From Macrostomum lignano (lineage: Eukaryota): a stretch of DNA of 64,000 nucleotides. Within the stretch, counting starts at the first letter, position 1. Every line of letters starts with the position of its first letter. Where the stretch lies: NCBI GenBank assembly GCA_002269645.1, contig NIVC01000850.1, forward strand, positions 335,904 through 399,903, written 5' to 3'. The position numbers were made by a program, and so were the translations under genes. Of this stretch, positions 43,166 to 63,830 are shown in pieces. The notes beneath the pieces are model-generated. The model was not told where the DNA came from and did not search any database. It saw nothing but the letters and a program-made list of their open reading frames with translations.

Positions 43166-43249
43166 ATCGTGTTTGATTACATTAATATCAATATTTGATG
43201 ATATGGTGTTTTTTATCTAACAAAGCCCGGCAAAAACATTCGCGCCCAG

Positions 43250-43769: not shown

Positions 43770-43816
43770 GTGAGAGTGACTAGCTTTGGTCGTCCGGGCC
43801 GCTGGGGTTTAAGTTA

Positions 43817-44469: not shown

Positions 44470-44682
44470 ACTTTGTAGTTCAAAGTCTGTGCATTTTTGC
44501 TTTACGATTTTTCGCACTACATTTGTACATTTGTACTACCGATTTTGTAAATCAAGTTAGGATTTGAGAAATTTTAATACAGATATCGATCGATATTTGT
44601 ACTATTTTTTGGACAATATTTTCATAAAATACTACAGTTTTTACAACGTTATTTTGTACTATACTATACCTATACAACGCAG

Positions 44683-44996: not shown

Positions 44997-47568
44997 AAAT
45001 ATGTGGTTGGAGTGTGGATTGCAGGTAAAAATTGACTGTTCATTTTCCGGGTTTTTTAATTTGCGATCGTACGCTAATTGTATTAACAATTTGAAACATA
45101 ACGCGATAGTTAAAATTAATAATTTTACTTTGGATTTTTTCCGCGCCATCTCACTAATCATATGATAAATATTCTAATACGCCTCATTTAATCTCATAGC
45201 ATCAGATGTTTGTCTCATTCCTAATTTTGCAAATCTCAGTCGATTCTGCTTATTTAAAATTTAAACTTTAAAGTTAAAAAATCACCATGGTTGTTGTAAC
45301 CAGTATTCCCGTGTATGCTGACAGTGCTACGAATCCGCAGGAACATAAAACGAAATAACATTCTGCCGGCAAAGTTATTTTGTTTTGTCTATAGAAAAAA
45401 TATTATATTTATTATGGCTTCAAAATTTGTTATTTTATAAATCCTCTAGTCACAACAATTTTCACCCTTTTCCTGTACAACAATTTCCAATGTCATGCAA
45501 CGGTCAAAATGTAAAAAATTAGCTACATGATGACCGGCGCAATGTAAAAGAACCCATTTTCTATATACGCTTGCAGACGTGTATCGGAGTCGAATGTTTT
45601 ACGGGTTTAAAACAATTGAACGTAACTAATTTTCCAACTTTTCTATTTAATCGATAGTTTATTATTAGTAGTTATGAATTAATAATGTATTATTTAGCCT
45701 CTTAATACTCGAGTACTGGATAGCTGCCTTTGTTTTTTAACAATTAAAGCGCGTCATACTAAAATTATTTGCTCATCACCTCTAGTTCCTCGCAGTGAAC
45801 AACCAGCTTTAAGTCAGTTTTGTTATATTTTTCATCTTATTAAATATTTTAATATCAGTTTTTCATTTGAAGTGAAAGAGTTAGCTATTAAAACTTATAA
45901 TTTACGATTTTTTTAAAAACAAGCGTTTTGTTTTACTAGCATGCGCATCTGAATACTTCTGTTAATTAACGTAATCGTGCTAAAGCAACTTGTATTTGTT
46001 ACTAATGTACATTTATTGTTATTCCTCTCCAGATTTTCTAAGGCAGTATTTTAGCTTCTAATTTTTGTTTTATTACTGCTATAATGCATTGAAGGATATA
46101 AGAGAATTAAATAGTTTTTTGTGAACTATTTTTGCTATCTTTGAATAGCAGAAGCTATAAAAGCGTATTTGTTGCATTGGAGTTGTAAAACCCGGAAAAT
46201 TTAGACTATTGGTTTGTACGAATAGAAGTTCAATTTCAAGCCTTAAAAGTTTTGCTTAATTATTTAAAAAATATTTAACTAAGTCATGCTTAGGGATGAA
46301 ACTTTTAATGGCTTTAAGAAACCTATAATCATCTTTTTGTAGCAATTATTTTGTCAGATTGGACTAATAATTACGAGTAATGAACAAACTCCCTTGTATA
46401 TATTGAGTGAGTGTTAGAAAAATGGTACGTGGCTATAATGTGTAGGGTAGTGTGTACATTGTCCCATAACTTTCATTTACGTTTTTGCTGATATTGACGG
46501 CTAATGCAGCTAAGTTTATATTATAATTATATATAATTTACAGTTTTCAACGAACTTAAATGCCTGTGTAAAAAATGATTCCTTTTGTTAGAATTACGCT
46601 AATATTTCCGCGCAAGAGTCAAACAGAGTGCTGGACCTTCGCTTCAAAATGATATAATTTTTTATTAATTTTTCAATTAATTGCTATTCATATTATGTTT
46701 TCATGCAATATTGAGCTGATACAATTGCTAATGTCTGCATTCATTAATTGCTTATTAGCCAAAGCGTTGACTCAATAACACGGCTAATCGATTTTATGCG
46801 GATATTAAATTTTACTATTCCCTCTCTCAGTACACTACTGTCGGAGCCTACTGTAAGTAGTATACTTCTCGTATTAAGTGGAAAATCTGTTATACCATGT
46901 GTTTCGTAAGCGTATTTTGTCTCGTTTTGCCAATATAAATATTACTAGTCGTGAAAATAAATGAGGGAAATAAGATCGACTAACTCATAAGTGAAGTCTT
47001 GAATTTGCAGATTGTGGCTTTGTGACTAAAAAAAAAATCAGATCTAGCTACGACTTAATTTTTATCCGTTTTATTATCGAATCATCGCATAATTAAGTTC
47101 TCAGTGTGCAAAGCACAAAAGTTCTATAAAACAGATGATTCAAAAGGAGGAAAGTAGTGTGTTGTTTTTTTTCCTAACAGTACACCAAACAAAAGGAAAC
47201 ACGTTGCAATACTCGTGTTAAAATTGGATATTTGGGTTGTCTGCGAATAAAGCGACTGAAACAAAACAAAATTTAAATTTAGCAAAGAAAAGAAAAGTTT
47301 TGCAGTCACCGTGTCGTTAAAAAAAGCGTGTGAAACTGCCAACGAGACATCAATTTTCCGGTACAAGAGAAACATTTTCTTCTCACGGACTCCTTGAAGG
47401 ATAAAAATAAAAACGCAGTTCCGACTATAGTCAAAAATAGTCCAGGTTTCAAATTAAGAAACAGATTTATTTTTTATTGCGCAGTGACCTTGTCAATGAG
47501 ATGCGAAAAGGCAGATAATGAATGGACACAGACAGACACAAAGCCAGAACAGACAAAAAAATATACAT

Positions 47569-47788
<220 letters not shown>

Positions 47789-48364
47789 CAGACCCATAAT
47801 ACACAGACATGTTGAGACCCCGAAGGAGGCAGAAGCGGCATTAATTATTCGAGTGTCTGTCTGCCTGTCATTGCTGTTTTCACTCTCAGTACCCTGTCGC
47901 ACATTGCCAACCGGAAAAGCCCTAATTATGTCACGCGTTGCAATTATGCTAATTAGACAAAGAACGCGAAAACAAAGCAAAGGACATGGCAAACCGGCAT
48001 GACACGGGCCAACCTGGTCTGGCAACTGAGCTGAGAATGTCTACAGACCGAATATTTCCCAGGAAATGTACAACGGTGCTCGGGTTATGCTAAAATTCAG
48101 GCGAATGTTATTTTAGACATCAAGAAATCTAACTGGCTGAGTGGCTGGTCAGACTTGTTTTGCCTTTAGAGGCCACTGGATTCATACTTTTAGTTCTAGC
48201 CTTGCAATTCCTGTGCCACGTGACTAAAGTGGTGCGCATTTGCTTTCGTTGCCGAGGGAGCTGATTCTTTGAAATTGAGGGACGCCACAGAAATGTAATG
48301 AATTATGCTATTTTTCTATTTTAAAGGGCTCAATTGCCGCTTTGGAAAGTTGTTAGTTTTAACT

Positions 48365-48975
48365 AAGTTTTAACTAAGTTGTTAGTTTGGAAGGTTGTGA
48401 GTTTAGAAGGTTGTCAGTTTAGAAGGTTGTCAGTTTGGAAGATTGTCAGTTTGGGAGGTTGTCAGTTTGGGAGGTTGTCAGTTTGGGAGGCTGTCAGTTT
48501 GGGAGGTTGTCAGTTTGGGAGGTTGTCAGTTTGGGAGGTTGTCAGTTTGGGAGGCTGTCAGTTTGGGAGGTTGTCAGTTTAGAAGCTTGTCAGTTTGGGA
48601 GGTTGTGAGTTTAGAAGGTTGTCAGTTTAGAAGCTTGTCAGTTTGGGAGGTTGTCAGTTTAGAAGCTTGTCAGTTTGAGAGGTTGTCAGTTTGAGAGGTT
48701 GTCAGTTTGGGAGGTTGTCAGTTTGGGAGGTTGTCAGTTTGTGAGGTTGTCAGTTTGGGAGGTTGTCAGTTTGGGAGGTTGTCAGTTTGTGAGGTTGTCA
48801 GTTTGGAAGATTGTCAGTTTGGGAGGTTGTCAGTTTGGGAGGTTGTCAGTTTGGAAGATTGTCAGTTTGGGAGGTTGTCAGTTTGGGAGGTTGTCAGTTT
48901 GGAAGATTGTCAGTTTGGGAGGTTGTCAGTTTGGGAGGTTGTCAGTTTGGAAAATTGTCAGTTTGGGAGGTTTTC
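48365..48975. repeat. 16-bp array GTTGTCAGTTTGGGAG
   Basis: Period 16. Confidence 0.94.
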
Positions 48976-49587
48976 AGTTTGGAGGGGATTTTTCCAGTTT
49001 AGAAGGGAGTTTACCAGTTCGGAAGGTTGCCAAAGTTGAAGGAAACCTGTCGGTTTGAAATTACATCTTCCAGTTGGGAATAAAGCCTCTTCATTTGCTT
49101 GAAAATCTCGTTTAGCAATTCAATATGGTCAAAAGCAAAGTATCCGGCCAGACAGACAAGGGGTGACAGGCAGCGCGCTGCGTCACATGACTTGTTCCCG
49201 CGTGCACTTTATCGCCAAAGCCAGCAGGCGGAGGCACTCGTGCGCCTTTACCTGTGCACGCATTTGCAGATTAGAACTCTTGAACGCCCACGCATTCAGT
49301 GGGACAAAAAAAGAGGAGTTTGGTGCACGAATTGTCTGCTGAGAAGACAAACAGACTGAGATAGAGGAGTGGAAGCAATCGCTACACACTCCCACTATCT
49401 GTATAGCTTGAGCACAGAGTAGGATATAGAAAATCGATATTCTCATATATAGACAAACTTATGTGTAGGCGTTTCTGCTTTGTTCAGACTATCGGTGGAA
49501 TAATGCTCTCATAAAAGCTGCATTTGGCTCGATATGCGCACTGATAAAACAGGCACCGCAGAGCAGGGCTGCGGGGCAGGAGGGAGT

Positions 49588-50190
49588 CTCCAGTGGCGCT
49601 AAAATCTCCCCAGTGGCGCTAAAATCTTCCCAGTGGCGCTAAAATCCCCCCATTGGTGCTAAAATCTTCCCAGTGGCGCTAAAATCTTCCCAGTGGCGCT
49701 AAAATCCCCCAGTGGCGCTAAAATCTTCCCAGTGGCGCTAAAATCCCCCCATTGGTGCTAAAATCTTCCAATGGCGCTAAAATCTTCCCAGTGGCGCTAA
49801 AATCCCCCCATTGGCGCTAAAATCTCCCCAGTGGCGCTAAAATCCCCCATTGGCGCTAAAATCTCCCCAGTGGCGCTAAAATCCCCTCAGTGGTGCTTAA
49901 ATCCTTCCAGTGGCGCTAAAATCCTCCCAGTGGCGCTAAAATCTCCCCAGTGGCGCTAAAATCACCCCATTAGCGCTAAAATCCTCCCAGTGGCGCTAAA
50001 ACCTCCCCAGTAGCGCTAAAATCCCCCCATTAGCGCTAAAATCTCCCCAGTGGCGCTAAAACCTTCCCAGTAGCGCTAAAATCCTCCCATTGGCGCTAAA
50101 ATCTCCCCAGTGACGCTGAAATCTTCCCAGTGGCGCTAAAATCTCCCCAGTGGCGCTAAAATCCCCCCATTAGCGCTAAAATCTCCCAAA
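49588..50190. repeat. 20-21-bp array CAGTGGCGCTAAAATCTCCC
   Basis: Read directly. Confidence 0.94.
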
Positions 50191-50500
50191 ATCTCCCTCA
50201 CATCTCCCTCACATCTCCCTCACATCTCCCTCACATCTCCCTCATATCTCCCTCACATCTCCCTCACATCTCCCTAACATCTCCCTAACATCTCCCTCAC
50301 ACCTCCCTCACATCTCCCTCACATCTCCCTCACATCTCCCTCATATCTCCCTCACATCTCCCTCACACCTCCCTCACATCTCCCTCACATCTCCCTCACA
50401 GCTCCCTCACATCTCCCTCACATCTCCCTCACATCTCTCTCACATCTCCCTCACATGACCCTCATATCTCCCTCATGTCTCCCTTATATCTCCCTCACAT
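50191..50500. repeat. 11-bp array ATCTCCCTCAC
   Basis: Period 11; abuts the previous array. Confidence 0.94.
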
Positions 50501-50829
50501 ATACTTCTTTTTATAACTTGCTGTCCTTGTTCTTAACCCTAGAAACACAGATGGCACAGCAGTGGTTTTTCTGTGTGTAAAATTGCCAATCTAGAAACAA
50601 CGGAAGTGCATCATCGTATCGGATAGTCCAAACAGATACATTTATGCTTGATAATCTGCTACAATAGGTAGAAAAACACAGCATGATGTGGCTTCTATAT
50701 TGCTACCAGCACAAGTCACGGGGTGCAAAGTATATTTTCTAGGAAACGCAAGCGGAAGGAGGTTCTTAGTAGTGCCAGAACTAAAAATAGTATAGTAATA
50801 TATAGTAATAACCATTTTCCCCAGCAGAC

Positions 50830-50834
50830 ATGGC
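50830..50834 (+). CDS. Predicted start micro-exon (ATG GC) of the PDP-like gene
   Basis: TTTTCCCCAG|CAGAC ATG GC|GTAAGT: acceptor at 50824, perfect donor at 50835; phase 2 fits the next micro-exon. Predicted from splice signals only. Confidence 0.4.
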
Positions 50835-51139
50835 GTAAGTGCATAGGTTCAGTCCCATGTGCAATATCATTTTAGCAGATAAAATTTGGCGGGAAACCAG
50901 ATGCCCTTTGATATCTGATTATTCAGTTCAAGCAGAGTGCGGTGCGTGGGAATGTGCTGTGAAGGATGTGAAAAAAGACAATTTTAGCCAAATAATTTCC
51001 GCATAAGATCCAGTGATTAAAATTGAAATATTGAAAACACAAATTTCTCTGTAATGGATAATTAATGACTGAGAGAGAAGAACAACAGTTTGCAATGAAG
51101 AGGAGGGTAGGTTAACGAAGAGAAGAGAGGCTAAAAAGG

Positions 51140-52508
51140 GAGACGTAAGGGAAAGACGAGAGGGAGAGACGTGAGGGAGAGACGTGAGGGAGAGACGTGA
51201 GGGAGAGACGTGAGGGAGAGACGTCAGGGAGAGATGTGAGGGAGAGACGTGAGGGAGAGACGTGAGGGAGAGACGAGAGGGAGAGACGTGAGGGAGAGAT
51301 GTGAGAGAGAGACGTGAGGGAGATGTGAGGGAGAGACGTGAGGGAGATGTGAGGGAGAGACGTGAGGGAGATGTGAAGGAGACGATAGGGAGAGGTGAGG
51401 GAGATGTGAAGGAGAAGATAGGGAGATATTAATGAGAGACAGCACAGCAGACACGTGAGGGAGATGTGAAGGAGAAGATAGGGAGAGGTGAGGGAGATGT
51501 GAAGGAGACGATAGGGAGATATTAATGAGAGACAGCACAGCAGACACGTGAGGGAGATGTGAAGGAGACGATAGGGAGATATTAATGAGAGACAGCACAG
51601 CAGACACTTGAGAGAGATGTGAAGGAGACGATAGGGAGATATTAATGAGAGACAGCACAGCAGACACGTGAGGGAGATGTGAAGGAGACGATAGGGAGAT
51701 ATTAATGAGAGACAGCACAGCAGACACTTGAGGGAGATGTGAAGGAGACGATAGGGAGATATTAATGAGAGACAGCACAGCAGACACGTGAGGGAGATGT
51801 GAAGGAGACGATAGGGAGATATTAATGAGAGACAGCACAGCAGACACTTGAGGGAGATGTGAAGGAGAAGATAGGGAGATATTAATGAGAGACAGCACAG
51901 CAGACACTTAAGGGAGATGTGAAGGAGACGATAGGGAGATATTAATGAGAGACAGCACAGCAGACACGTGAGGGAGATGTGAAGGAGACGATAGGGAGAT
52001 ATTAATGAGAGACAGCACAGCAGACACTTGAGAGAGATGTGAAGGAGACGATAGGGAGATATTAATGAGAGATAGCACAGCAGACACTTGAGAGAGATGT
52101 GAAGGAGACGATAGGGAGATATTAATGAGAGACAGCACAGCAGACACGTGAGGGAGATGTGAAGGAGACGATAGGGAGATATTAATGAGAGACAGCACAG
52201 CAGACACTTAAGGGAGATGTGAAGGAGACGATAGGGAGATATTAATGAGAGACAGCACAGCAGACACGTGAGGGAGATGTGAAGGAGACGATAGGGAGAT
52301 ATTAATGAGAGACAGCACAGCAGACACGTGAGGGAGATGTGAAGGAGACGATAGGGAGATATTAATGAGAGATAGCACAGCAGACACGTGAGGGAGATGT
52401 GAAGGAGACGATAGGGAGATATTAATGAGAGACAGCACAGCAGACACGTGAGGGAGATGTGAAGGAGACGATAGGGAGATATTAATGAGAGACAGCACAG
52501 CAGACACG
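51140..52508. repeat. 11-13-bp units grading into a 60-bp higher-order repeat
   Basis: GAGGGAGAGACGT and GAGGGAGATGT units, then ~16 copies of a 60-mer from ~51500. Confidence 0.95.
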
Positions 52509-53097
52509 AGAGAAAGCTGCAGGTGGCGGCTGGCAATAAAAGATTGACATGTTTAGCCATGTCACGAGGCAGGCTAAGCTAATGTCAATTGTTTAAAGTC
52601 AATACAGACATAATCGTAATTTCCGCGGCACCGCTGCAGAAGAGAAAATAAAAGTACAATTTGGCATGAATTCTTCAACAGGCCGCCTCCGACTGTCCCT
52701 GTGCCCTCTAGCGCACGTGATTTCTTCTGCAGCCAATAGGGACAAAGCCAGACTACCTTAGTGTCACCCCCAGTCTGCCCGCGTGTTATGTGGGCGGCTT
52801 GGGGTTAGCAAATGCTATTATATCTAAATGTATACATGTAATAGGCCGGCACCCTAAAGTTGCAGTTCAACCGAGTCGAGACTCTCACCTGAGAAAGGCT
52901 GTCGCTTCTAAAACTTTTTTAGAATAATTTTTTCTAGACATCCGTAAGGATTATTTTTTGATTAATCTGTAGTTTTTTCAAACAGATTAGATTGAAATTA
53001 GAACACTGAATATACTAGCCATTCAATTGTATTTTCAGTCTTAGAATTTTTTCATTGGATTTTTAAATTTACTCAAAAATTGAGTACAATACAACAG

Positions 53098-53139
53098 CGG
53101 CGATGAAGATGCTCAGCTGTCTACTGTACTCGGCTTTGG
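53098..53139 (+). CDS. Predicted 42-nt micro-exon of the PDP-like gene (GDEDAQLSTVLGF)
   Basis: TACAACAG|...TTTGG|GTGAGC; phase 2 in and out; joins in frame to the acceptor GGCCGCAG| at 54037. Confidence 0.45.
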
Positions 53140-53179
53140 GTGAGCATGAGCAGATAATTGATATTCTTGCTGCGAGGGG

Positions 53180-53886
53180 TACAGTGGGAGGTAGAGAGAA
53201 AGGTAGAGTGGGAGGTAGAGAGAGAGGTAGAGTGGAAGATAGATCGAGAAGTAGATTGGAAGATAGAGAGGTAGAGTGAAAAGTAGATAGGTAGATTGGA
53301 AGGTAGAGAAGAAGAGTGGAAGGTAGAAAGGTAGAGTAGAAAGTAGATAGGTAGATTGGAAGGTAGAAAGGTAGAGTGGAAAGTAGATAGGTAGATTGGA
53401 AGGTAGAAAGGTAGAGGGGAAAGTAGATAGGTAGATTGGAAGGTAGAAAGGTAGAGTGGAAAGTAGATAGGTAGATTGGAAGGTAGAAAGGTAGAGTGAA
53501 AAGTAGATAGGTAGATTGGAAGGTAGAAAGGTAGAGTGGAAAGTAGAAAGGTAGAGTGGAAGGTAGAAAGGTAGAGTGGAAAGTAGATAGGTAGAGTGGA
53601 AAGTAGATAGGTAGATTGGAAGGTAGAAAGGTAGAGTGGAAAGTAGATAGGTAGAGTGGAAGGTAGAAAGGTAGAGTGGAAAGTAGATAGGTAGAGTGGA
53701 AAGTAGATAGGTAGATTGGAAGGTAGAAAGGTAGAGTGTAAAGTAGATAGGTAGAGTGGAAAGTAGATAGGTAGAGTGGAAAGTAGATAGGTAGATTGGA
53801 AGGTAGAAAGGTAGAGTGTAAAGTAGATAGGTAGAGTGGAAAGTAGATAGGTAGAGTGGAAAGTAGATAGATAGGTAGGATTGGAA
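53180..53886. repeat. Purine-rich 10/20-bp array GTAGAGTGGAAAGTAGATAG
   Basis: Read directly; fills the predicted intron 53140-54037. Confidence 0.93.
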
Positions 53887-54037
53887 GGTCGAAGAATAGC
53901 TCGTACAATGACTATAGAGAACATGCTTAGTTCCTAGAATAAATAGTGAAAGGTTTTGAAACCGAATATCTCAACCTGAAAACATTCAATTAGCCTTCCA
54001 ATGCCCATCAACCTGTCAATTGTCAAAAAGGCCGCAG

Positions 54038-54995
54038 TTACAACCAGCAGCAGAAGCAGGAGCAGAGTGGACCAGCTACGGAGCCCAACTCACCGGCAGC
54101 AGCCAGGGCCCGACCCTCAGACTGCTCAAAGCCGAGCAGCAGGACTCGAGCCCAGTCTCTACCGCAGAACTGCATCAGCCAGCACCGCGTCCTCACTAAT
54201 TCGGCTAACGCTACTGCTTCTGGAAGCAGCAATGACAGCCACTGCCCGGCTCTGGCGAAGAGCTGCACCCCGAACGGGTCTCCGTCAGCTTCGCCACCGT
54301 CGCCCAAGTCGGCGGCTCCCAGATGGCCGCCCGTCGGCTTGGCGATTCAGCAGGAGACCACCGACTGCGGCAGAGTGCACTCCGCCTGCCGGCCAGCAGC
54401 GTCGGGCGGCGGCATCTCCCCAGACTCCGTTGCCTCATCGGAATGGACAGCGGCCAGACTGACCCGAAGCTCATCGACATTCGCCGGTCTATTTGTCGGC
54501 GTCGGCGGTCGGCAGTGCGCCGCGGCGGTGGCGGCTCTGGCGGCGGACTACGCCGCGGCCGAGTTGGCTTCGAATTCGCCGATTGAAGCTCGCGACGCTC
54601 GGAGAAGTCTGCTCAGACAGTTCGACTGGAGCGACAACGAGGACTGCTGCAGTAATAGTCACAGTCCGGGCGAAGACGCTGCTGCCGTCGATGGCAACGC
54701 AGACGTCCCGGCGGTGTCCCTGCGGCGGCCCGGCAGCGGCCAGTTCGTGCCCGAGGACCTGGTCTCCATGGCTAAGGCCGACTGGCTGACCGAGAGGCTG
54801 CTGCGGGCGGCAAATTCCCAGCCCGACGCCGATTGCACAACTGCGGACCGACTGTGCCAGGCCATGATCAGACTGGATGCCGATCTGTGCGGCGCGGCTG
54901 GGCAGTCGGCCTGGACTCTGCGGGCAGCCACCACGGGTGCCGTGGGATCCGCCTGTCTGATCTCTGGCGACGGGAGCCGGTGCTGCTTGATGCAG
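54038..54995 (+). CDS. PDP: PP2C / pyruvate dehydrogenase phosphatase-like protein, N-terminal half (5' boundary uncertain)
   Basis: Frame open 53994-55007. ELASNSPIEAR, LLRQFD, AVSL, QAMIRLDADL and LRAATTGAVG align by eye with PDP motifs QLPANAPIEDR, LGVFDGH, AVSL, NAFKRLDNDI and LRVAFSGATA. Donor CAG|GTAAAG at 54996. Confidence 0.8.
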
Positions 54996-55246
54996 GTAAA
55001 GATTTGACTAGATTGGCTGAGTAAAGTTATTAAACACTACATATCGGTAGATAGAAATCTTTTATGCATTTAAAAATTGTTGAAATAAAAAAATCTCATT
55101 ATAAAACTTACTATCGCTACATATCGGTAGATAGTAGTTATTTTACTTATTTGACAACTACCAGATTATAAATATCATCATAGAAAGTTATTTACCCAAA
55201 ATATCGGCAGATTTGAGAAAAATGATACGAAATTGAACAATTTCAG

Positions 55247-55885
55247 ATCGGCAACAGCGCTGCCGTGATTGGCTCTCGAAGTGCCCCCATTGCCGCTGCC
55301 TCCGACGCCGAAGATGGCACTGACAGCGTCAACAATGTCCAGACGGCCTGGCGATGGCGGCAGCCGCTCGCCCAGCAGACCATTGAGAATGGTCGGGAAG
55401 TTCGACGAGTTCTGGCCGAGCACCCGGCATCCGAGCGCGGCTCCGTGTTCGCCGGCAACCGCCTCCTCGGCCGCATGGAGGCGCTCAGAGCCTTCGGCCT
55501 GGTGCAGTTGAAGTGGCCGAAGGAGCGCCTGAACTCTTGGACTTCTTGGCCAGCCGGCCAGTCGCCACCGAGCTGCGAGACGCCGCCCTACCTGACCGCC
55601 AGACCGGAAGTGATCGAGGTGGGCATCGACCCGGCCGCCGACCGCTTTATCATCCTGGGAAGCCCCGGCCTGTGGGACCGGCTGTCTCCCCAGCAGGCGG
55701 TGGCCTGCGTTGGCGGCCAGCTGTTGGCGGCGCAGTCCCAGGGTTCGAATCCTAGCGGAGAAAATCTTGCGGCCACTTTGGTGCAGCTGGCCGAGAGCTG
55801 CGGGCACAGGGACTCGGCGGCCGGCTTTAACGAGGCCGACTGGGAGAACGAGGAGGTGTCCGCCTGTATCGTGCTGCTGCACTGA
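55247..55885 (+). CDS. PDP: PP2C / PDP-like protein, C-terminal exon, catalytic aspartates substituted
   Basis: Acceptor TTTCAG| (phase 0); IGNSAAVIG, EVRRVLAEHP, RLLGRMEALRAFG, KW, TPPYLTARPEV and FIILGSPGLWD match the PDP family pattern; TGA at 55883-55885. Confidence 0.88.
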   Translation: MGNSAAVIGSRSAPIAAASDAEDGTDSVNNVQTAWRWRQPLAQQTIENGREVRRVLAEHPASERGSVFAGNRLLGRMEALRAFGLVQLKWPKERLNSWTSWPAGQSPPSCETPPYLTARPEVIEVGIDPAADRFIILGSPGLWDRLSPQQAVACVGGQLLAAQSQGSNPSGENLAATLVQLAESCGHRDSAAGFNEADWENEEVSACIVLLH

Positions 55886-55922: not shown

Positions 55923-56156
<234 letters not shown>

Positions 56157-57114
56157 CCTTGCTGTATAAAGCATTCTGTTTCACCGTCTGTTTGCCTGTA
56201 AATCAAGCCAATGCAGGCAGCCTGTTTCATTCTGTGTCCTCAGTCAAGTGCTTGTCGTATCTTACGTTGGAATTTCTGAGCGTCTTGAACTGCATGCAAG
56301 CCCAGAGCTACCTCAGAAATCAATGATGAAGCTCCCTTACCAGTCTCACACTCAAACCCAGTCAGTTCATTCATGGAGGCCCTAATTTTATTGCTCATGT
56401 TGTATTATTAATAGTCATGTCGCCATTATTTTCAGTTCATTCACTGCACCGTAACTTTTCCAGTCTTGTACACACTTCGACTTCGACTTGTTGCTCATTC
56501 ATCAAGTCTGCCTGGTTGTTAAAAGAAATTTATTGATCTATTTTTTCCATTCTACGCCCGCTGCACCAACCTAGATTTTTCGCAATCATTGTAAATAATA
56601 AATTTGATTTTCTGATCTTCTGTACATTTTTCCGTATGGAAGCATTCAATGCTAAATCAGACTTGAAATTCTGTCTTACAGAAAGTGCAATGTGCTCAAA
56701 CTATTAATGATAAGCGCGCACAAACACGCATGGGTATACACAATCACAATTATTGAAAAATATATATTATTGAACGATGGGAATTATTTTGTAAAAATAA
56801 AATATCGATTTTATAAATCGAATGCTGTTTATTTTATTTATTTCGTTGTATAATTGAAAGCTTTCTGTGACTGTATTGTATAACTTGTGAGAAAGAGACA
56901 GCAGATGGAGTTGAGAGGCTGGACACACTGACAAAAAGCTAAGGCAGTTGAAGCGTTTACGAGCGGTACAGATGAGGCATGTTCGCAGCCAAGTGTTTCC
57001 AGAGAGTCTGGGAGAGTACACGTACGCAAGGAGTTGTGCAAATAAACTTACTTTTGAACAATACATATATTATTGAAAATAATAACTATGTATGCTTCGT
57101 ACTCTACAGTCACA

Positions 57115-58015
57115 AGGCAGCGGAGAAGAGAGTAGAGAAAGAGCAGAGAGGGGAGCGGAGAAGGGAGAAGAGAAGTGTTTGGAAAAGGAAGCGGAGTAGA
57201 GCGCGGATGAGGAAGAGAAGGCAGCGGAGGAGAGAGCGGAGAAGGGAGAAGAGAAGGGGCGGAGGAGAGAGCGGAGGAGAGAGCGGAGGAGAGAGCGGAG
57301 GAGAGAGCGGAGAAGGCAGCGGAGGAGAGAGCGGAGAAGGGAGAAGAGAAGGGGCGGAGGAGAGAGCGGAGGAGAGAGCGGAGGAGAGAGCGGAGAAGGG
57401 AGAGAGAGAGGGGGCGGAGAGAGAGCGGACGAGAGAGCGGAGAAGGGAGAAGAGAAGGGGCGGAGAAGAGAGCGGAGGAGAGAACGAAGAAGAGAAAAGA
57501 GAAGGCAGCGGACGAGAGAGCGGAGAAGGGAAAAGAGAAGGCAGCGGACGAGAGAGCGGAGAAGGGAGAAGAGAAGGGGCGGAGGAGAGAGCGGAGGAGA
57601 GAGCGGAGGAGAGAGCGGAGGAGAGAGCGGAGAAGGCAGCGGAGGAGAGAGCGGAGAAGGGAGAAGAGAAGGGGCGGAGGAGAGAGCGGAGGAGAGAGCG
57701 GAGGAGAGAGCGGAGAAGGGAGAAGAGAAGGGGGCGGAGAAGAGAGCGGACGAGAGAGCGGAGAAGGGAAAAGAGAAGGGGCGGAGGAGAGAGCGGAGGA
57801 GAGAGCGGAGAAGGGAAAAGAGAAGGGGCGGAGGAGAGAGCGGAGGAGAGAGCGGAGAAGGGAGAAGAGAAGGGGGCGGAGAAGAGAGCGGACGAGAGAG
57901 CGGAGAAGGGAAAAGAGAAGGGGCGGAGGACAGAGCGGAGGAGAGAGCGGAGAAGGGAAAAGAGAAGGGGGCGGAGGACAGAGCGGAGGAGAGAGCGGAG
58001 AAGGGAAAAGAGAAA
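57115..58015. repeat. Purine-rich ~12-bp array GAGAGAGCGGAG with AAGGG variants
   Basis: Read directly. Confidence 0.92.
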
Positions 58016-58574
58016 GGGTCATTAGTGAATGAGTGCAGAGCTAGGTGCACTGACACAGGACAAGAGCAAATACCTGTAAAACTAATCACACGGCTAAGCA
58101 CAGACAGAACGCAAGAAGCAGGTACAATCAGCTCATTAGTAAAGTGACGCAGTTCGCAAGTGTCACGTGGTCGATTCTGTTAAGTAATTGGCGCACAATG
58201 CACTAAGAAAATTTTCTAATCTCACTCTAGTACATATCCCTATATATAGATAAAAGATAAAATAATTATTAGTAAGACAATTACCAAGTTATCAGACGCC
58301 TCGCTCTATACTGTAAAACGCATTTTAATCAGTCTTTCTGAATAGAAAAAAATCTGTAGCTTGTATAACTAATTCTTTAAATTATGTACACTGGTTTGTG
58401 TGTGTGCCGGGGCGTGTCTTTTGCGACTATGGTAATTCTACGGTAACTATGGTAACTACGGTAACTATGGTAACATGGTAACGTTTTTAAAAGCAAAAGC
58501 TAAAAGTTGTATAACGAGTGAATAAAGTTGCTCATCCTTAACTGGCTGGCGCTATTTCATGGATTGCGCTACTT

Positions 58575-60875
58575 CATGGATGATGCTATTTGGTGTGGCG
58601 CTATTTAGTGTGGTGCTATTTAGTGTGGTGCTATTTAGTGTGGCTCTATTTAGTGTGGCGCTATTTAGTGTGCGCTATTTAGTGTGGCGCTATTTAGTGT
58701 GGCGCTATTTAGTGTGGCGCTATTTAATGTGGCGCTATTTAGTGTGGCGCTATTTAGTGTGGCGCTATTTCATAGATGGTGCTATTTAGTGTGGTGCTAT
58801 TTAGTGTGGTGCTATTTAGTGTGGCGCTATTTAGTGTGGCGCTATTTAGTGTGGCGCTATTTCATAGATGGCGCTATTTAGTGTCGCGCTATTTAGTGTC
58901 GCGCTATTTAGTGTGGCGCTATTTAATGTGGCGCTATTTAGTGTGGCGCTATTTAGTGTGGCGCTATTTAGTGTGGCGCTATTTCATAGATGGCGCTATT
59001 TAGTGTGGTGCTATTTAGTGTGGTGCTATTTAGTGTGGAGCTATTTCATAGATGGCGCTATTTAGTGTGGCGCTATTTAGTGTGGCGCTATTTAGTGTGG
59101 CGCTATTTCATAGATGGCGCTATTTAGTGTGGCGCTATTTAGTGTCGCGCTATTTAGTGTGGCGCTATTTAATGTGGCGCTATTTAGTGTGGCGCTATTT
59201 AGTGTGGCGCTATTTAGTGTGGCGCTATTTCATAGATGGCGCTATTTAGTGTGGTGCTATTTAGTGTGGTGCTATTTAGTGTGGCTCTATTTAGTGTGGT
59301 GCTATTTAGTGTGGCGCTATTTAGTGTGGCTCTATTTAGTGTGGCGCTATTTAGTGTGGCGCTATTTAGTGTGGCGCTATTTAGTGTGGTGCTATTTAGT
59401 GTGGTGCTATTTCATAGATGGTGCTATTTAGTGTGGTGCTATTTCATAGATGGCGCTATTTAGTGTGGTGCTATTTCATAGATGGCGCTATTTAGTGTGG
59501 TGCTATTTAGTGTGGCGCTATTTAGTGTGGCGCTATTTCATAGATGGCGCTATTTAGTGTGGCGCTATTTAGTGTCGCGCTATTTAGTGTGGCGCTATTT
59601 AATGTGGCGCTATTTAGTGTGGCGCTATTTAGTGTGGCGCTATTTAGTGTGGCGCTATTTCATAGATGCGCGCTATTTAGTGTGGTGCTATTTAGTGTGG
59701 TGCTATTTAGTGTGGCTCTATTTAGTGTGTGCTATTTAGTGTGGCGCTATTTAGTGTGGCTCTATTTAGTGTGGCGCTATTTAGTGTGGCGCTATTTAGT
59801 GTGCCGCTATTTAGTGTGGTGCTATTTAGTGTGGTTGCTATTTCATAGATGGTGCTATTTAGTGTGGTGCTATTTCATAGATGGCGCTATTTAGTGTGGT
59901 GCTATTTAGTGTGGTGCTATTTAGTGTGGCGCTATTCGGTGTGGCGCTATTTAGTGTCGCGCTATTTAGAGTGGCGCTATTTAGTGTGGCGCTATTTAGT
60001 GTGGTGCTATTTAGTGTGGTGCTATTTCATAGATGGCGCTATTTAGTGTGGTGCTATTTAGGTGGCGCTATTTAGTGTGGCGCTATTCGGATGGCGCTAT
60101 TTAGTGTTGCTCTATTTAGTGTGGCGCTATTTAGTGTGGCGCTATTCGGTGTTGCGCTATTTAGTGTTGCTCTATTTAGTGTGGCGCTATTTAGTGTGCG
60201 CGCTATTCGGTGTGGCGCTATTTAGTGTTGCTCTATTTAGTGTGGCGCTATTTAGTGTGGCGCTATTTAGTGTGGCGCTATTTAGTGTTGCTCTATTTAG
60301 TGTGGCGCTATTTAGTGTGGTGCTATTTAGTGTGGCGCTATTCGGTTGTGGCGCTATTTAGTGTCGCGCTATTTAGTGTGGAGCTATTTCATAGATGGTG
60401 TTATTTAGTGTGGTGCTATTTAGTGTGACCGTCTATTTAGTGTGTGCTATTTAGTGTGGTGCTATTCGGTGTGGCGCTATTTAGTGTCGCGCTATTTAGT
60501 GTGGCGCTATTTAGTGTGGCGCTATTTAGTGTGGGCGCTATTTAGTTGTGGCGCTATTTAGTGCTGGCGCTTTCGGTGTGGCGCTATTTAGTGTTGCTCT
60601 ATTTAGTGTGGCGCTATTTAGTGTGGCGTATTCGGTGTGGCCGCTTATTTGAAAGTGTTGCTCTATTTAGTGTGGCGCTATTTAGTGTGGCGCGCTATTC
60701 GGTGTGGCGCTATTTAGTGTTGCTCTATTTAGTGTGGCGCTATTTAGTGTGCGCGCTATTTAGTGTGGCGCTATTTAGTGTGGTGCTATTTAGTGTGGCG
60801 CTATTTAGTGTCGCTCTATTTAGTGTGCGCGCTATTTAGTGTGGCGCTATTTAGTGTGGCGCTATTTAGTGTGGC
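58575..60875. repeat. 15-bp minisatellite GGCGCTATTTAGTGT with a recurrent 17-bp variant GGCGCTATTTCATAGAT
   Basis: Period 15; ~150 copies. Confidence 0.96.
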
Positions 60876-60921
60876 GAATACGTACAAGTACTCAACGGCT
60901 AATCACGGGGGATTTATTACG

Positions 60922-61258
60922 CTACTTTTCACACCAGCGTCGCTTCGCTGAACTCCACCTGTGGTCCCGCCGCTGTCCACAGCTGGTTTCCGCGTCCGAG
61001 GACCAGCTAAATGAAACTTTTTTATTGGCAATGGGCTCGAGCGAAGTGTACGCTAGCCGGCTTGGCGATTCAGGGTCACCTCCTCTTTCTGGAGATGCGG
61101 TTGCTGCACTGGAGGCTGCGGAGGCTGCAGCGCGTGGCTGTTGGGACTCCAAGCTCGGTGCCAATTGAAGCATTGCGAAACTGTTGAAGAGGGGCCTGAG
61201 CCTCCGCAAGCGACCGAATCTGCGGCTCTCTGCATTGCATCGCTTGCTCCCGCGGGCT
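60922..61258 (-). CDS. Possible terminal coding exon of an unidentified gene
   Basis: GC-rich non-repetitive island between two arrays; open minus frame with A/S/R-rich tail and KKVSF; candidate acceptor CCAAACTCAG|. No family recognised. Confidence 0.3.
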
Positions 61259-61269
61259 CTGAGTTTGGC

Positions 61270-62280
61270 TAGAATGGGATTTTGAGCGTGACAGAATGGG
61301 ATCTGAAGTGGATCTGAGGTGACAGAATGGGATCTGAGGTGACAGAATGGGATCTGAGGTGACAGAATGGGATCTGAGGTGACAGAATGGGCATCTGAGG
61401 TGACAGAATGGGATCTGAAGTGACAGAATGGGATCTGAAGCTGACAGAATGAAATCTGAGGTGACAGAATGGGTTTTGAGGTCACAGAATGGAATTTGAG
61501 GTGACAGAATTGGATCTGAAGTGACAGAATGGGATTTAGGGTGACAGAATGGAATTTGAGGTGACAGAATGGAATTTGAGGTGACAGAATGGGATTTGAG
61601 GTGACAGAATGGGTTTTGAGGTGACAGAATGGGTTTTGAGGTGACAGAATGGAATTTGAGGTGACAGAATGGGATTTGAGGTGACAGAATGGGATTTGAG
61701 GTGACAGAATGGGTTTTGAGGTGACAGAATGGGATCTGAAGTGACAGAATTGGATCTGAAGTGACAGAATGGGATTTAGGGTGACAGAATGGAATTTGAG
61801 GTGACAGAATGGAATTTGAGGTGACAGAATGGGATTTGAGGTGACAGAATGGGATTTGAGGTGACAGAATGGGTTTGAGGTGACAGAATGGGATCTGAGG
61901 TGACAGAATGGGTTTTGAGGTGACAGAATGGGATCTGAGGTGACAGAATCGGATCTGAGGTGACAGAATGGGATTTAGGGTGACAGAATGGAATTTGAGG
62001 TGACAGAATGGAATTTGAGGTGACAGAATGGGATTTGAGGTGACAGAATGGGATTTGAGGTGACAGAATGGGTTTTGAGGTGACAGAATGGGATCTGAGG
62101 TGACAGAATCGGATCTGAGGTGACAGAATGGGATCTGAAGTGACAGAATGGGATCTGAGGTGACAGAATGGGATTTGAGGTGACAGAATGGGTTCTGAGG
62201 TGACAGAATGGGATCTGAGGTGACAGAATGGGATCTGAGGTGACAGAATGGGATCTGAGGTGACAGAATGGGTTTTGATG
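61270..62280. repeat. 20-bp minisatellite GTGACAGAATGGGATCTGAG, ~50 copies
   Basis: Period 20. Confidence 0.95.
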
Positions 62281-62659
62281 TGACTTATCTGTCCCAATTT
62301 TCTGTCACACACCGCACCCCAGTCTCTCCAACCTCTACCGCACTCTCAATGCTATGCAGACTGGAAGCATTGTAGACCCCCATCATGCATCAAGCGCGTG
62401 CACGCTTCACATCAGTCGGAGCTAAAAATAGAAACAGCGCGTGCCTAGATGTGCGTGGATCAATAATGAAAATTGTATTCTCATGCCAAGGTAACACGCA
62501 TACGCCCGTATTTGCTCCAGAGTACAGGCGGCTGAGGGCTACAGTTGCTCGCTCGAGCACGTGGTGGGTGATGCCAGTTTGCCAGCACTAAGTTTTTTGC
62601 ATTGTAAATTTGCCAAGCATAGGTTTAGCCCATGGTTTTGCATCTACTGCCTTCTCGCT

Positions 62660-63830
62660 GCCTTCTTCGCTCTCTTCTCCGCTCTCTTCTCCGCACTCTT
62701 CTCCGCTCTCTTCTCCGCTCTCTTCTCCGCTCTCTTCTCCGCTCTCTTCTCCGCACTCTTCTCCGCACTCTTCTCTTCTCTCTTCTCCGCTCTCTTCTCC
62801 GCTCTCTTCTCCGCTCTCTTCTCCGCTCTCTTCTCCGCTCTCTTCTCCTCACTCTTCTCCCTTCTCCGCACTCTTCTCCGCTCTCTTCTCCGCTCTCTTC
62901 TCCGCTCTCTTCTCCGCTCTCTTCTCCGCTCTCTTCTCCTCACTCTTCTCCTTCTTTGCTCTCTTCTCCGCACTCTTCTCTGCACTCTTCTCTGCTCTCT
63001 TCTCCGCTCTCTTCTCCGCACTCTTCTCCGCTCTCTTCTCCGCTCTCTTCTCCACTCTCTTCTCCTCACTCTTCTCCCTTCTCCGCTCTCTTCTCCGCTC
63101 TCTTCTCCGCTCTCTTCTCCGCTCTCTTCTCCTCACTCTTCTCCCTTCTCCGCTCTCTTCTCCGCTCTCTTCTCCGCTCTCTTCTCCGCACTCTTCTCCC
63201 TTCTCCGCTCTCTTCTCCGCACTCTTCTCCCTTCTCCGCTCTCTTCTCCGCACTCTTCTCCCTTCTCCGCTCTCTTCTCCGCTCTCTTCTCCGCTCTCTT
63301 CTCCACACTCTTCTCCCTTCTCCGCTCTCTTCTCCGCACTCTTCTCCTCACTCTTCTCCCTTCTCCGCTTTCTTCTCCGCACTCTTCTCCTTCTCCGCTC
63401 TCTTCTCCGCACTCTTCTCCTCACTCTTCTCCCTTCTCCGCTCTCTTCTCCGCTCTCTTCTCCGCACTCTTCTCTGCTCTCTTCTCCCTTCTCCGCTCTC
63501 TTCTCCGCACTCTTCTCCGCACTCTTCTCCGCTCTCTTCTCCGCACTCTTCTCCCTTCTCTGCTCTCTTCTCCGCTCTCTTCTCCGCTCTCTTCTCCTCA
63601 CTCTTCTCCCTTCTCCGCTCTCTTCTCCGCTCTCTTCTCCGCTCTCTTCTCCGCACTCTTCTCCGCTCTCTCTCCGCTCCCTTCTCCGCTCTCTTCTCCG
63701 CTCTCTTCTCCGCTCTCTTCTCCGCTCTTCTTTCCGCTCTCTTCTCCGCTCTCTTCTCCGCTCTCTTCTCCGCTCTCTTCTCCGCTCTCTTCTCCGCTGC
63801 CTTTTCCGCTTCTTTCCAAACCCCAGTCCG
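62660..63830. repeat. Pyrimidine-rich 12-bp array CTCTTCTCCGCT
   Basis: Read directly. Confidence 0.94.

What the first reader, a model, noticed from the sequence alone, without database searches (positions are those of the whole stretch)
54038..55885. Probable pseudophosphatase: intact PDP-like ORF with most catalytic acids replaced
Seen versus the established PDP/PP2C consensus (aligned from memory): PIEDR to PIEAR, FDGH to FDWS, GDSR to GNSA, DHN to QQT, RAFGD to RAFGL, (A/S)DGLW to SPGLW, terminal DDIT to EEVS. Structural motifs (EHP, RLLG, KW, TPPYLTAxPEV, GLWD) are kept and the frame is unbroken across two exons. Inference: selection keeps the fold but not metal-dependent catalysis, suggesting a scaffold, substrate-trap or competitor role. 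I do not know of a described dead PDP paralogue.
Basis: partly seen in the sequence, partly recalled or inferred. Interest (0 to 1): 0.7.

Follow-up and report, generated by a model that had tools for sequence, protein, structure and literature searches.

The report
Catalytically dead PDP paralogue in flatworm
The flatworm Macrostomum lignano carries a gene for a copy of pyruvate dehydrogenase phosphatase that has lost its metal-binding catalytic residues but is still kept intact by selection, so it is probably a non-enzymatic binding protein, a modest new example of a well-known kind of "dead enzyme".

Summary
The window is Macrostomum lignano DNA. The ORF is the annotated gene BOX15_Mlig012261g1 (546 aa, "hypothetical protein", PF00481).

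- **Gene model:** three exons, not two: 53103-53139, 54031-54995 and 55247-55885.
- **Family:** it is a PDP-type PP2C. PDP1 is the best solved-structure match by sequence (E 1e-16) and by fold (Foldseek E 5e-15).
- **Active site:** all canonical metal-binding or catalytic acids are replaced (FDGH to FVGV, GDS to GNS, RAFGD to RAFGL, SDGLWD to SPGLWD, DDIT to EEVS). The flap motifs (KW, TPPYLTARPEV) are kept.
two of the seven pairs (PIEAR, FDWS) lie in an out-of-order second copy of the N-terminal segment.
- **Selection:** three genomic copies differ by 14 synonymous and 6 non-synonymous changes (dN/dS about 0.15, P = 3.5e-5). It is therefore not a decaying pseudogene.
- **Active paralogue:** a canonical PDP with every motif intact also exists in the genome.
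- **Distribution:** no orthologue was found outside M. lignano, and no paper describes a dead PDP.

The pseudophosphatase reading is supported in silico. Its role as binder, trap or competitor remains inferred. It is a new member of a known kind (PPM pseudophosphatases such as TAB1 and PHLPP), of moderate-to-low interest.

The parts
53103..53139 (+). Coding exon 1 (MKMLSCLLYSAL + first base of G13). ATG at 53103 is the first ATG after an AG acceptor at 53083-53084. Donor GTGAG at 53140.
   Evidence: Joining 53103-53139 + 54031-54995 + 55247-55885 reproduces GenBank protein PAA76014.1 exactly. The annotated gene range equals 53103-55885. The exon is conserved in both other copies.
53140..54030 (+). 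Intron 1 (891 nt), mostly a 20/40-nt tandem-repeat array (53178-53886).
54031..54995 (+). Coding exon 2. It encodes a Ser/Pro/Ala/Gln-rich disordered N-terminal region (residues 14 to about 146) and the N-terminal half of the PP2C fold.
   Evidence: The frame is open from 53994 to 54995. AlphaFold gives pLDDT below 50 for residues 1-146 and 76-93 for 149-200 and 250-345. Substitutions between copies are synonymous in this frame.
54306..54308 (+). Codon AAG (K105) in the window. It is ATG (Met) in the two other genomic copies, where it serves as the annotated start of the 442-aa model P0010.
54492..54566 (+). FVGVGG + RQCAAAVAALAADYAAAEL. This is the structural equivalent of the FDGHGG strand and helix alpha-1. 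The bridging Asp is replaced by Val and the general-acid His by Val.
   Evidence: HMMER vs PDB, MAFFT, PDP profile, shuffling test 0/500, predicted strand 162-169 and helix 173-191, coordinates
54564..54632 (+). LASNSPIEARDARRSLLRQFDWS. It sits in the post-alpha-1 insert and is partly low-confidence in the model.
54996..55246 (+). Intron 2 (251 nt, GT..AG, phase 0, AT-rich). It carries short internal repeats and is about 240 nt longer in copy L001.
55247..55885 (+). Coding exon 3 with the TGA stop: the C-terminal half of the PP2C fold including the PDP-type flap.
55247..55264 (+). IGNSAA (GDS/GDC motif, Asp replaced by Asn)
55487..55501 (+). RAFGL (RAFGD motif, Asp replaced by Leu)
55511..55612 (+). 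KW ... TPPYLTARPEV: the PDP-specific flap region, retained.
55658..55678 (+). GSPGLWD (SDGLWD motif, the M1-ligand Asp replaced by Pro)
55847..55882 (+). NEEVSACIVLLH: the C-terminal RDDITVxV motif with Asp-Asp replaced by Glu-Glu. The protein ends at ...LLH, exactly as the canonical M. lignano PDP does.
   Evidence: BLASTP of P0001 vs P0312

Best explanation
This is a transcribed, protein-coding paralogue of pyruvate dehydrogenase phosphatase (PDP, PP2C/PPM fold) in Macrostomum lignano. It has lost the binuclear metal site and is maintained by purifying selection as a non-catalytic protein, that is, a PPM-type pseudophosphatase.

**Shown**
- PDP-type homology and a predicted fold.
- Replacement of all canonical catalytic acids.
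- Purifying selection on the frame.
- A separate intact PDP in the genome.

**Inferred**
- It cannot hydrolyse phosphoserine.
- It works by binding. The best-conserved part is the C-terminal lobe with the PDP-specific flap (KW...TPPYLTARPEV, residues 376-495, about 60% of conserved PDP positions kept). The most likely mechanism is therefore that it docks a PDP-type partner or phospho-substrate without turning it over, for example as a trap or competitor that opposes the active PDP at phospho-E1alpha of the pyruvate dehydrogenase complex.

My probabilities: dead and selectively maintained about 0.8; acts on the pyruvate dehydrogenase complex specifically about 0.3.
For: - **Identity and model:** 100% match to PAA76014.1, BOX15_Mlig012261g1.
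- **Family:** PF00481 E 5.2e-13; PDP1 2pnq/3mq3 E about 1e-16; PDP profile E 4.5e-49.
- **Fold:** AlphaFold core pLDDT 80-93, pTM 0.63. Foldseek top three hits are all PDP1 (E 5e-15 to 1e-13, target TM 0.62-0.67), with other PP2Cs and TAB1 lower.
- **Active site:** of 120 columns at least 90% conserved in 39 active PDPs, 56 are kept. All 8 catalytic acids are changed (S, S, V, N, L, P, E, E) and the general-acid His is Val, while 6 of 9 other conserved acids are kept.
- **Contrast with relatives:** nearly all of the 150 closest library proteins keep the motifs.
- **Selection:** three genomic copies differ by 14 synonymous and 6 non-synonymous changes. dN/dS is 0.15-0.17, P = 3.5e-5. Shifted frames give a ratio above 2. 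There are 3 indels in the 251-nt intron against 1 in 1593 nt of CDS. GC3 (0.76) exceeds GC1, which exceeds GC2.
- **Transcription (indirect):** the GenBank annotation was built only from RNA-seq-derived transcripts with trans-splice and poly(A) boundaries (PMC5730564).
- **Active paralogue:** BOX15_Mlig021355g1, Mlig030750g1 and Mlig001710g5 carry PVEDR, FDGHAG, VGDC, RAFGD, SDGLWD, RDDIT and an Arg-rich presequence. This paralogue is 31% identical to the dead copy and shares the same ...LLH C-terminus.
[quoted passage not shown] PPM catalysis requires the Asp-coordinated binuclear site (PMC12002173).
Against: - No activity, metal-binding, localisation or interaction data exist.
- Transcription is inferred from how the annotation was made, not from reads seen here. 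No Logan (SRA-assembly) protein matches this gene.
- No orthologue outside M. lignano was found, so long-term conservation across species is untested. Selection is measured only between within-genome copies with 20 substitutions.
- The window copy lacks the internal ATG present in the other two copies. Copy L002 has a 1-nt deletion in a CCCC run upstream of that ATG, which is either a real lesion or an assembly error.
- The N-terminus is not an obvious mitochondrial presequence, unlike that of the canonical paralogue.
- The region matching PDP1 residues 98-151, the proposed lipoyl pocket (PMC12146199), is not conserved: 1 of 8 conserved columns kept, pLDDT below 50. Docking to E2 like PDP1c is doubtful.
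- Glu-Glu at the last motif, Asn at GDS, and the acidic stretch FDWSDNED could in principle still hold one metal, as TAB1 and PHLPP2 do.
Confidence: 0.7

Rival explanations
1. It is a non-functional pseudogene. A duplicated PDP copy is decaying neutrally, and its frame is open only because the sequence is GC-rich and the death was recent.
For: - No in-frame ATG lies in the main exon of the window copy (AAG where the other copies have ATG).
- Copy L002 has a 1-nt deletion.
- Older-assembly models P0002 and P0003 read as frameshifted.
- No Logan transcript-derived protein matches the gene.
- No orthologue was found elsewhere.
- GC-rich DNA gives long ORFs in all frames.
Against: - dN/dS is 0.15 with P = 3.5e-5. 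Substitutions concentrate at third positions of this frame only, and the shifted frames give a ratio above 2.
- Indels are depleted in the CDS relative to the intron.
- The protein is only about 31% identical to its active paralogue yet has 546 uninterrupted codons. At 65% GC about 2.5% of random codons are stops, so an open run of about 330 codons has a chance of about 2e-4 (my own calculation).
- Loss is selective for catalytic acids rather than uniform.
- The gene model comes from a transcript-based annotation.
- P0002 and P0003 come from the older ML2 assembly, which the Mlig_3_7 paper reports as having fewer intact ORFs.
Confidence: 0.08
2. It is still an active phosphatase or other hydrolase that uses a non-canonical active site, for example Glu-Glu, Asn and acidic residues from the inserted 'PIEARD...FDWSDNED' segment.
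For: - The second, out-of-order copy keeps PIE and FD, and it is followed by an acidic run.
- DD to EE is conservative.
- Some proteins with degenerate PPM motifs have been reported active (Cyr1, disputed PHLPP).
Against: - The bridging Asp of FDGH is Val in the strand that the profile and the model place in the core.
- The M1 ligand Asp of DGLWD is Pro, and the Asp of RAFGD is Leu.
- All known PPM enzymes need the Asp-coordinated binuclear site, and proteins lacking it (TAB1, PHLPP2) are inactive in vitro.
- The PIEAR/FDWS segment lies in a partly low-confidence loop.
Confidence: 0.07
3. It is a selected non-catalytic protein, but its function is unrelated to the pyruvate dehydrogenase complex. 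A neofunctionalised PP2C-fold binding module acts outside mitochondria, as TAB1 does for TAK1/p38.
For: - The N-terminal 146 residues are long, disordered and Ser/Pro/Gln-rich, and the start is not Arg-rich, unlike the canonical paralogue's presequence.
- The lipoyl-pocket region of PDP1 is not conserved.
- The branch is long, with only about 30% identity to any PDP.
Against: The best-kept parts are exactly the PDP-specific ones (KW, TPPYLTARPEV, EHPxxER, RLLG), which other PP2C subfamilies lack. This suggests a PDP-type partner surface is under constraint. No localisation data exist either way.
Confidence: 0.35

Closest known systems
Pyruvate dehydrogenase phosphatase catalytic subunits PDP1/PDP2 (PDB 2PNQ, 3MQ3, 6V0T)
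   Same: Best sequence and fold match. It has the same PP2C beta-sandwich and the PDP-specific flap motifs KW and TPPYLTAxPEV, plus EHPxxER, RLLG and GLWD.
   Different: All metal-binding and catalytic acids are replaced. About 31 conserved columns are deleted, including roughly 45 residues between the VGEHMSG and NAATHL regions. The region of the proposed lipoyl pocket is not conserved. It has a long disordered N-terminus and an out-of-order duplicate of the N-terminal motif segment.
Canonical M. lignano PDP (BOX15_Mlig021355g1, Mlig030750g1, Mlig001710g5; P0312/P0039)
   Same: Same genome. It is 31% identical over 301 residues, has the same shortened region before NLATLLV/NLAATLV, and has the same C-terminal end ...LLH, whereas other PDPs run on.
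   Different: The canonical copy keeps PVEDR, FDGHAG, VGDC, RAFGD, SDGLWD and RDDIT and has an Arg-rich presequence. It has 4 exons, and none of its intron positions is shared with the dead copy. Its GC3 is 0.88-0.95 against 0.76.
TAB1 (TAK1-binding protein 1), a PP2C-fold pseudophosphatase
   Same: PP2C fold with a degenerate metal site, used as a binding and regulatory protein. It is a structural hit at E about 7e-5.
   Different: It belongs to a different PP2C subfamily and has no PDP flap motifs. TAB1 is conserved across animals, whereas this protein was found only in M. lignano. Its partners are unknown.
PHLPP1/PHLPP2 and fungal Cyr1 PP2C domains; Talaromyces marneffei EEA18836.1
   Same: PPM domains lacking the canonical aspartates, classed as pseudophosphatases. 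EEA18836.1 is likewise lineage-restricted.
   Different: Those are multidomain proteins (PH, LRR, cyclase) or fungal, and none derives from the PDP subfamily.

Membership tests
PPM / PP2C fold (Pfam PF00481) | Significant match to the family profile | tested here: met
   PF00481 E 5.2e-13, 49.7 bits against a cut-off of 20.3. Only profile positions 99-253 of 255 are matched.
PPM / PP2C fold (Pfam PF00481) | Central beta-sandwich flanked by helices | tested here: met
   AlphaFold2 model has pTM 0.63 and core pLDDT 80-93. Foldseek hits to PDP1, ABI1, PPM1A/B, PPM1K and TAB1 all have probability 1.00. This is a prediction, not an experimental structure.
PPM / PP2C fold (Pfam PF00481) | [quoted passage not shown] | tested here: not met
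   S148/S149, V168 (and V170 for His), P474 and E536/E537. In addition N337 replaces the GDS Asp and L419 replaces the RAFGD Asp.
PDP subfamily (pyruvate dehydrogenase phosphatase) | Closest relatives by sequence and structure are PDPs | tested here: met
   Top PDB hits by phmmer and by Foldseek are PDP1. The named top library hits are PDPs. PDP profile E 4.5e-49.
PDP subfamily (pyruvate dehydrogenase phosphatase) | PDP-specific flap and signature motifs (KW ... TPPYLTAxPEV, EHPxxER, RLLG) | tested here: met
   All are present. 59-60% of conserved PDP columns are kept in residues 376-495.
PDP subfamily (pyruvate dehydrogenase phosphatase) | Surface pocket (rat PDP1c residues 98-151) proposed to bind the lipoyl group of E2 | tested here: not met
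   In the corresponding residues, about 196-275, 1 of 8 conserved columns is kept and pLDDT is below 50 for 212-247.
PDP subfamily (pyruvate dehydrogenase phosphatase) | Mitochondrial matrix targeting presequence | tested here: inconclusive
   The N-terminus MKMLSCLLYSALGRSYNQQQKQEQ... is not Arg-rich, whereas the canonical paralogue has MTIRRAAARPAWLRRWLH.... No targeting predictor was available.
PDP subfamily (pyruvate dehydrogenase phosphatase) | Dephosphorylates E1alpha of the pyruvate dehydrogenase complex | not testable with these tools
   This needs an enzyme assay. The sequence predicts no activity.
PPM-type pseudophosphatase (TAB1 / PHLPP kind) | Phosphatase fold kept but catalytic motif residues mutated | tested here: met
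   criterion as in PMC13216928
PPM-type pseudophosphatase (TAB1 / PHLPP kind) | Maintained by purifying selection (not a pseudogene) | tested here: met
   dN/dS 0.15-0.17 between three genomic copies, P = 3.5e-5. Indels are depleted in the CDS. The comparison is within-genome only, with 20 substitutions.
PPM-type pseudophosphatase (TAB1 / PHLPP kind) | Expressed | tested here: inconclusive
   The GenBank model derives from an RNA-seq-only annotation pipeline. No reads or transcript contigs were seen directly, and the database holds no Logan-derived protein for this gene.
PPM-type pseudophosphatase (TAB1 / PHLPP kind) | No catalytic activity of the purified protein | not testable with these tools
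   This needs biochemistry.

The most novel reading that the evidence does not exclude
The dead PDP is imported into mitochondria and binds phospho-E1alpha (or the active PDP's docking site) without hydrolysing it. It thereby shields the inactivating phosphates and holds the pyruvate dehydrogenase complex off. That would be a previously unknown third layer of PDC control beside the kinases and phosphatases, perhaps tied to life in oxygen-poor intertidal sand.
Probability: 0.12. Interest if true: 0.6.

Novelty: new member of a known kind. Interest (0 to 1): 0.33.

Why it matters
Pseudoenzymes derived from PP2C phosphatases (TAB1, PHLPP1/2) turned out to be regulators that work by binding. No such derivative of the pyruvate dehydrogenase phosphatase branch has been described.

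If this protein still recognises the PDP substrate or docking site, it offers a natural 'substrate-trap' version of PDP and a possible extra control on the entry of pyruvate into the TCA cycle.

M. lignano has transgenesis and RNAi, so the idea is testable. The significance is limited. The gene was seen in one species only, it is already annotated (as a hypothetical PPM-domain protein), and dead paralogues of enzymes are common.

Tried and rejected
1. **Frameshift hypothesis, rejected.** I considered that the true start is the presequence-like ORF from ATG 54232 in frame 1 (MTATARLWRRAAPRTG...), followed by a frameshift into the PP2C frame. Substitutions between copies are synonymous in frame 0 and non-synonymous in the shifted frames. 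The annotated three-exon CDS also reproduces the GenBank protein.
2. **Wrong guess for the canonical PDP.** I guessed that the GC-rich-looking library hit P0022 was the canonical M. lignano PDP and spent a database search on it. Its relatives are arthropods. The canonical PDP was then found by ranking library hits on Ala/Arg/Gly/Pro content and looking up names.
3. **Literature look-ups, nothing found.** I searched for the gene ids, for PDP1/PDP2 in the supplements of the genome paper, and for 'Macrostomum' plus 'pyruvate dehydrogenase phosphatase'.
4. **Dating the duplication, unresolved.** The neighbour-joining tree puts the dead copy on a long branch at the base of animal PDPs, next to the canonical M. 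lignano PDP but not resolved as its sister.
5. **Shared intron positions, none.** The canonical gene has introns after residues about 89, 178 and 365. The dead gene has one between CLMQ and IGNS.
6. **Direct similarity between the two N-terminal segments, none.** Residues 131-191 against 190-262 show nothing above shuffles. The duplication is therefore inferred only from each segment's match to the PDP consensus.
7. **Bacterial-type promoter and terminator scan downstream of the stop.** It is irrelevant for a eukaryote.
8. **Older-assembly models set aside.** P0002, P0003 and P0004 were not used as evidence of decay because they come from the more error-prone ML2 assembly.
Full report
**What the sequence is**

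The window is genomic DNA of the free-living flatworm Macrostomum lignano, and its last base is the end of contig NIVC01000850.1. The reading frame in the finding translates to GenBank protein PAA76014.1 (BOX15_Mlig012261g1, 546 aa, 'hypothetical protein', PF00481) at 100% identity.

- **Exons:** joining 53103-53139, 54031-54995 and 55247-55885 reproduces that protein exactly (1641 nt). The annotated gene range equals 53103-55885.
- **Start codon:** the gene has three coding exons, not two. The start codon lies in a 37-nt exon about 900 nt upstream, separated by an intron made mostly of a 20/40-nt tandem repeat.
- **Position 54038:** An older gene model (P0004) uses it to fuse the upstream gene to this ORF through the same small exon read in another frame. 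That upstream gene is a 1170-aa cadherin ending near 44944.
- **Intron 2:** the intron at 54996-55246 is GT..AG, phase 0 and AT-rich.

**Is it PDP-like, beyond chance?**

Yes.
- Pfam PP2C scores E 5.2e-13.
- The best solved-structure sequences are rat and bovine PDP1 at E about 1e-16.
- A profile I built from 39 active animal and fungal PDPs scores E 4.5e-49.
- An AlphaFold2 model made with that alignment has a confident core (pLDDT 80-93; pTM 0.63). Disorder is predicted for residues 1-146, 212-247 and about 505-542.
- Its three best Foldseek matches in the PDB are all PDP1 (E 5e-15 to 1e-13, TM 0.62-0.67 on the target). Other PP2Cs and the pseudophosphatase TAB1 follow at E about 1e-5 to 1e-4.

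**The catalytic residues**

I aligned the protein with 39 active PDPs. Of 120 columns at least 90% conserved among them, it keeps 56.

The acids of the catalytic motifs are all changed:

| Canonical motif | Here | Change |
|---|---|---|
| PIED | residues 148-149 | E148S, D149S |
| FDGH | FVGV | D168V, H170V |
| GDS | GNS | D337N |
| RAFGD | RAFGL | D419L |
| SDGLWD | SPGLWD | D474P |
| RDDIT | NEEVS | D-D to E536-E537 |

By contrast, 6 of 9 other conserved acids are kept (D295, D297, D326, E385, E397, D466). That is 0 of 8 against 6 of 9, Fisher P = 0.009.

These are the aspartates whose loss defines PPM-type pseudophosphatases in the literature (PMC13216928). PPM catalysis depends on the Asp-coordinated binuclear metal site, and relatives lacking it (TAB1, PHLPP2) are inactive (PMC12002173).

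Among the 150 closest proteins in a 1.8-billion-sequence library, essentially all keep the motifs. Only a few show one or two changes, for example P0034 with TGG and RALGN.

The other two (PIEDR to PIEAR, FDGH to FDWS) refer to residues 191-213, 'LASNSPIEARDARRSLLRQFDWS'.

- This stretch resembles the PDP 'QLASNNPIEDTRAEARCLL..FDGH' well: an 8-residue identity with one insect PDP, and only 3 of 500 shuffles reach its score.
- It comes after residues 154-191, 'ARLTRSSSTFAGLFVGVGGRQCAAAVAALAADYAAAEL', which match 'ARCLLTTGLLLGVFDGHGGAACAQVVSKRLFEYIAASL' even better (0 of 500 shuffles).
- HMMER, MAFFT and the model (strand 162-169, helix 173-191) all place that earlier segment in the core.

The order of the two motifs is thus inverted relative to every PDP. 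The simplest reading is a partial internal tandem duplication of the N-terminal segment, each copy having decayed in a different part. This is an inference. The two segments show no direct similarity to each other. Under either mapping the catalytic residues are lost.

**Pseudogene or maintained gene?**

The Mlig_3_7 assembly holds two more copies: L001 (NIVC01000399.1, P0009) and L002 (NIVC01001748.1, P0010).

- **Substitutions:** over the CDS from 54039 to the last sense codon (1593 nt compared), the three copies differ at 20 sites, 14 synonymous and 6 non-synonymous. Nei-Gojobori pS is 0.035 and pN is 0.005, giving a ratio of 0.15-0.17.
- **Significance:** the chance of at least 14 synonymous changes among 20 under neutrality is 3.5e-5. 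Shifting the frame by 1 or 2 makes the ratio exceed 2.
- **N-terminal extension:** the disordered region 54039-54305 shows 3 synonymous and 0 non-synonymous changes.
- **Indels:** there are 3 in the 251-nt intron against 1 in the CDS (P = 0.009).
- **Composition:** base composition is codon-structured (GC3 0.76, GC1 0.63, GC2 0.59).
- **Age:** the protein is only about 31% identical to its nearest active relative, so an uninterrupted 546-codon frame cannot be a recently dead gene.

Two blemishes remain. The window copy has AAG where the others have an in-frame ATG (54306-54308). L002 has a 1-nt deletion in a CCCC run at 54268 upstream of that ATG, which may be an assembly error.

**Transcription**

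I could not see reads. The GenBank annotation of this assembly was made exclusively from a genome-guided RNA-seq transcriptome, with experimentally mapped trans-splice and poly(A) sites (PMC5730564). The model therefore implies a transcript. Its first exon begins just after an AG acceptor, and ATG 53103 is the first ATG after it, as expected for a trans-spliced mRNA (inference). The small exon and its donor are conserved in all three copies. No protein from SRA-derived (Logan) assemblies matches this gene, so expression may be low.

**A separate active PDP exists**

Library hit P0039, with cluster mates P0311 and P0312, is M. lignano BOX15_Mlig030750g1, Mlig001710g5 and Mlig021355g1.

- It has PVEDR, FDGHAG, VGDC, RAFGD, TPPYLTAEP, SDGLWD and RDDIT, plus an Arg-rich N-terminal presequence.
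- The dead protein is 31% identical to it over 301 residues. It shares two features that other PDPs lack: a shortened segment before NLA(A)TLV, and termination exactly at ...LLH. This points to a duplication within the flatworm lineage.
- A distance tree cannot date it, and the two genes share no intron position.

**Distribution and literature**

The exhaustive representative search found nothing closer than ordinary PDPs (E 5e-24, about 40% identity over the C-terminal half) outside M. lignano. No paper was found that mentions the gene, a PDP in Macrostomum, or a dead PDP paralogue.

**How it most likely works**

Conservation is uneven.

| Region | Residues | Conserved PDP positions kept |
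|---|---|---|
| Helix/flap half (EHPxxER, RLLG, RAFG, KW, TPPYLTARPEV, GLWD) | 376-495 | 59-60% |
| RLDxD helix to GDS strands | 276-345 | 50% |
| N-terminal strands and helix | 147-195 | 33% |
| Stretch matching rat PDP1c 98-151 | 196-275 | 12% |

The last stretch is the surface pocket proposed to hold the lipoyl group of E2 (PMC12146199).

In PP2C enzymes the flap shapes substrate choice (established knowledge of the family). I therefore think the protein keeps a PDP-type partner or substrate surface while being unable to hydrolyse. On that view it is a binder, trap or competitor, most plausibly for phospho-E1alpha, rather than a lipoyl-domain-docked enzyme.

This step is inferred. The non-presequence-like N-terminus leaves open a role outside mitochondria, unrelated to the pyruvate dehydrogenase complex.

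**Verdict**

The pseudophosphatase interpretation is supported by every computational test available. It is a new, lineage-restricted member of a known kind (PPM-fold pseudophosphatases) and the first I could find that derives from the PDP branch. It is of moderate-to-low general interest until a partner or phenotype is shown.

Noticed in passing
window 47569-53886 and 55925-63814: The gene is a GC-rich island (65% GC) inside dense tandem-repeat DNA. Arrays seen: (ATAG)56, a 16-mer x38, a 20-mer x30, an 11-mer x28, a 60-mer x17, a 20/40-mer array inside intron 1, (TCTG)58 starting 40 nt after the stop codon, GA-rich 12/83/95-mers, a 15-mer x150, a 20-mer x49 and a 12-mer x103.
   Followed up: partly
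window ~24900-26000: There is a (TCTA)n microsatellite more than 1 kb long (GC 0.25, GC skew -1 in the composition profile).
   Followed up: partly
window 56979-58025 (+): The 348-aa ORF 'ERAEERAEEKRRGG...' is just the translation of a GA-rich tandem repeat (57114-58018). It is not evidence of a gene.
   Followed up: partly
window 54996-55246; L001 ~11970-12110: Intron 2 contains three copies of an ACATATCGG(T/C)AGAT(A/T)G-like unit. The L001 copy carries about 240 extra nt made of the same unit, so the intron is itself a small expanding repeat.
   Followed up: partly
window 54306-54308 and 54265-54268: This codon is AAG (Lys) here but ATG in the other two genomic copies, one of which is annotated to start there. 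Copy L002 also lacks one C of a CCCC run just upstream, which would break the long N-terminal frame if it is real.
   Followed up: partly
window 54232-54462 (+, frame 1): An out-of-frame 77-codon ORF begins MTATARLWRRAAPRTGLRQLRHRR and looks like a mitochondrial presequence. The substitution pattern shows that the other frame is the selected one, so this is probably a by-product of GC-rich sequence.
   Followed up: yes
window 42235-45020 (+) and 53085-53139: The upstream neighbour is a 1170-aa cadherin-domain gene ending near 44944. An older UniProt model, misnamed 'Protein grainyhead' (P0004), fuses its last exons to the PDP-like ORF through exon 53085-53139 read in a different frame and through acceptor 54037|54038.
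   Followed up: partly
L004 3001-6361 (NIVC01000020.1): The canonical M. lignano PDP gene has 4 exons, GC3 of 0.88-0.95, an Arg-rich presequence and all catalytic motifs. At least three annotated copies exist in the assembly, one of them (P0311, 745 aa) with a long Gly/Ala-rich read-through tail.
   Followed up: partly
protein P0034 (library hit, 475 aa, arthropod-like PDP; source unknown): This is an otherwise canonical PDP with TGG in place of TGD and RALGN in place of RALGD. It may be a partially degenerate PDP in another animal.
   Followed up: no
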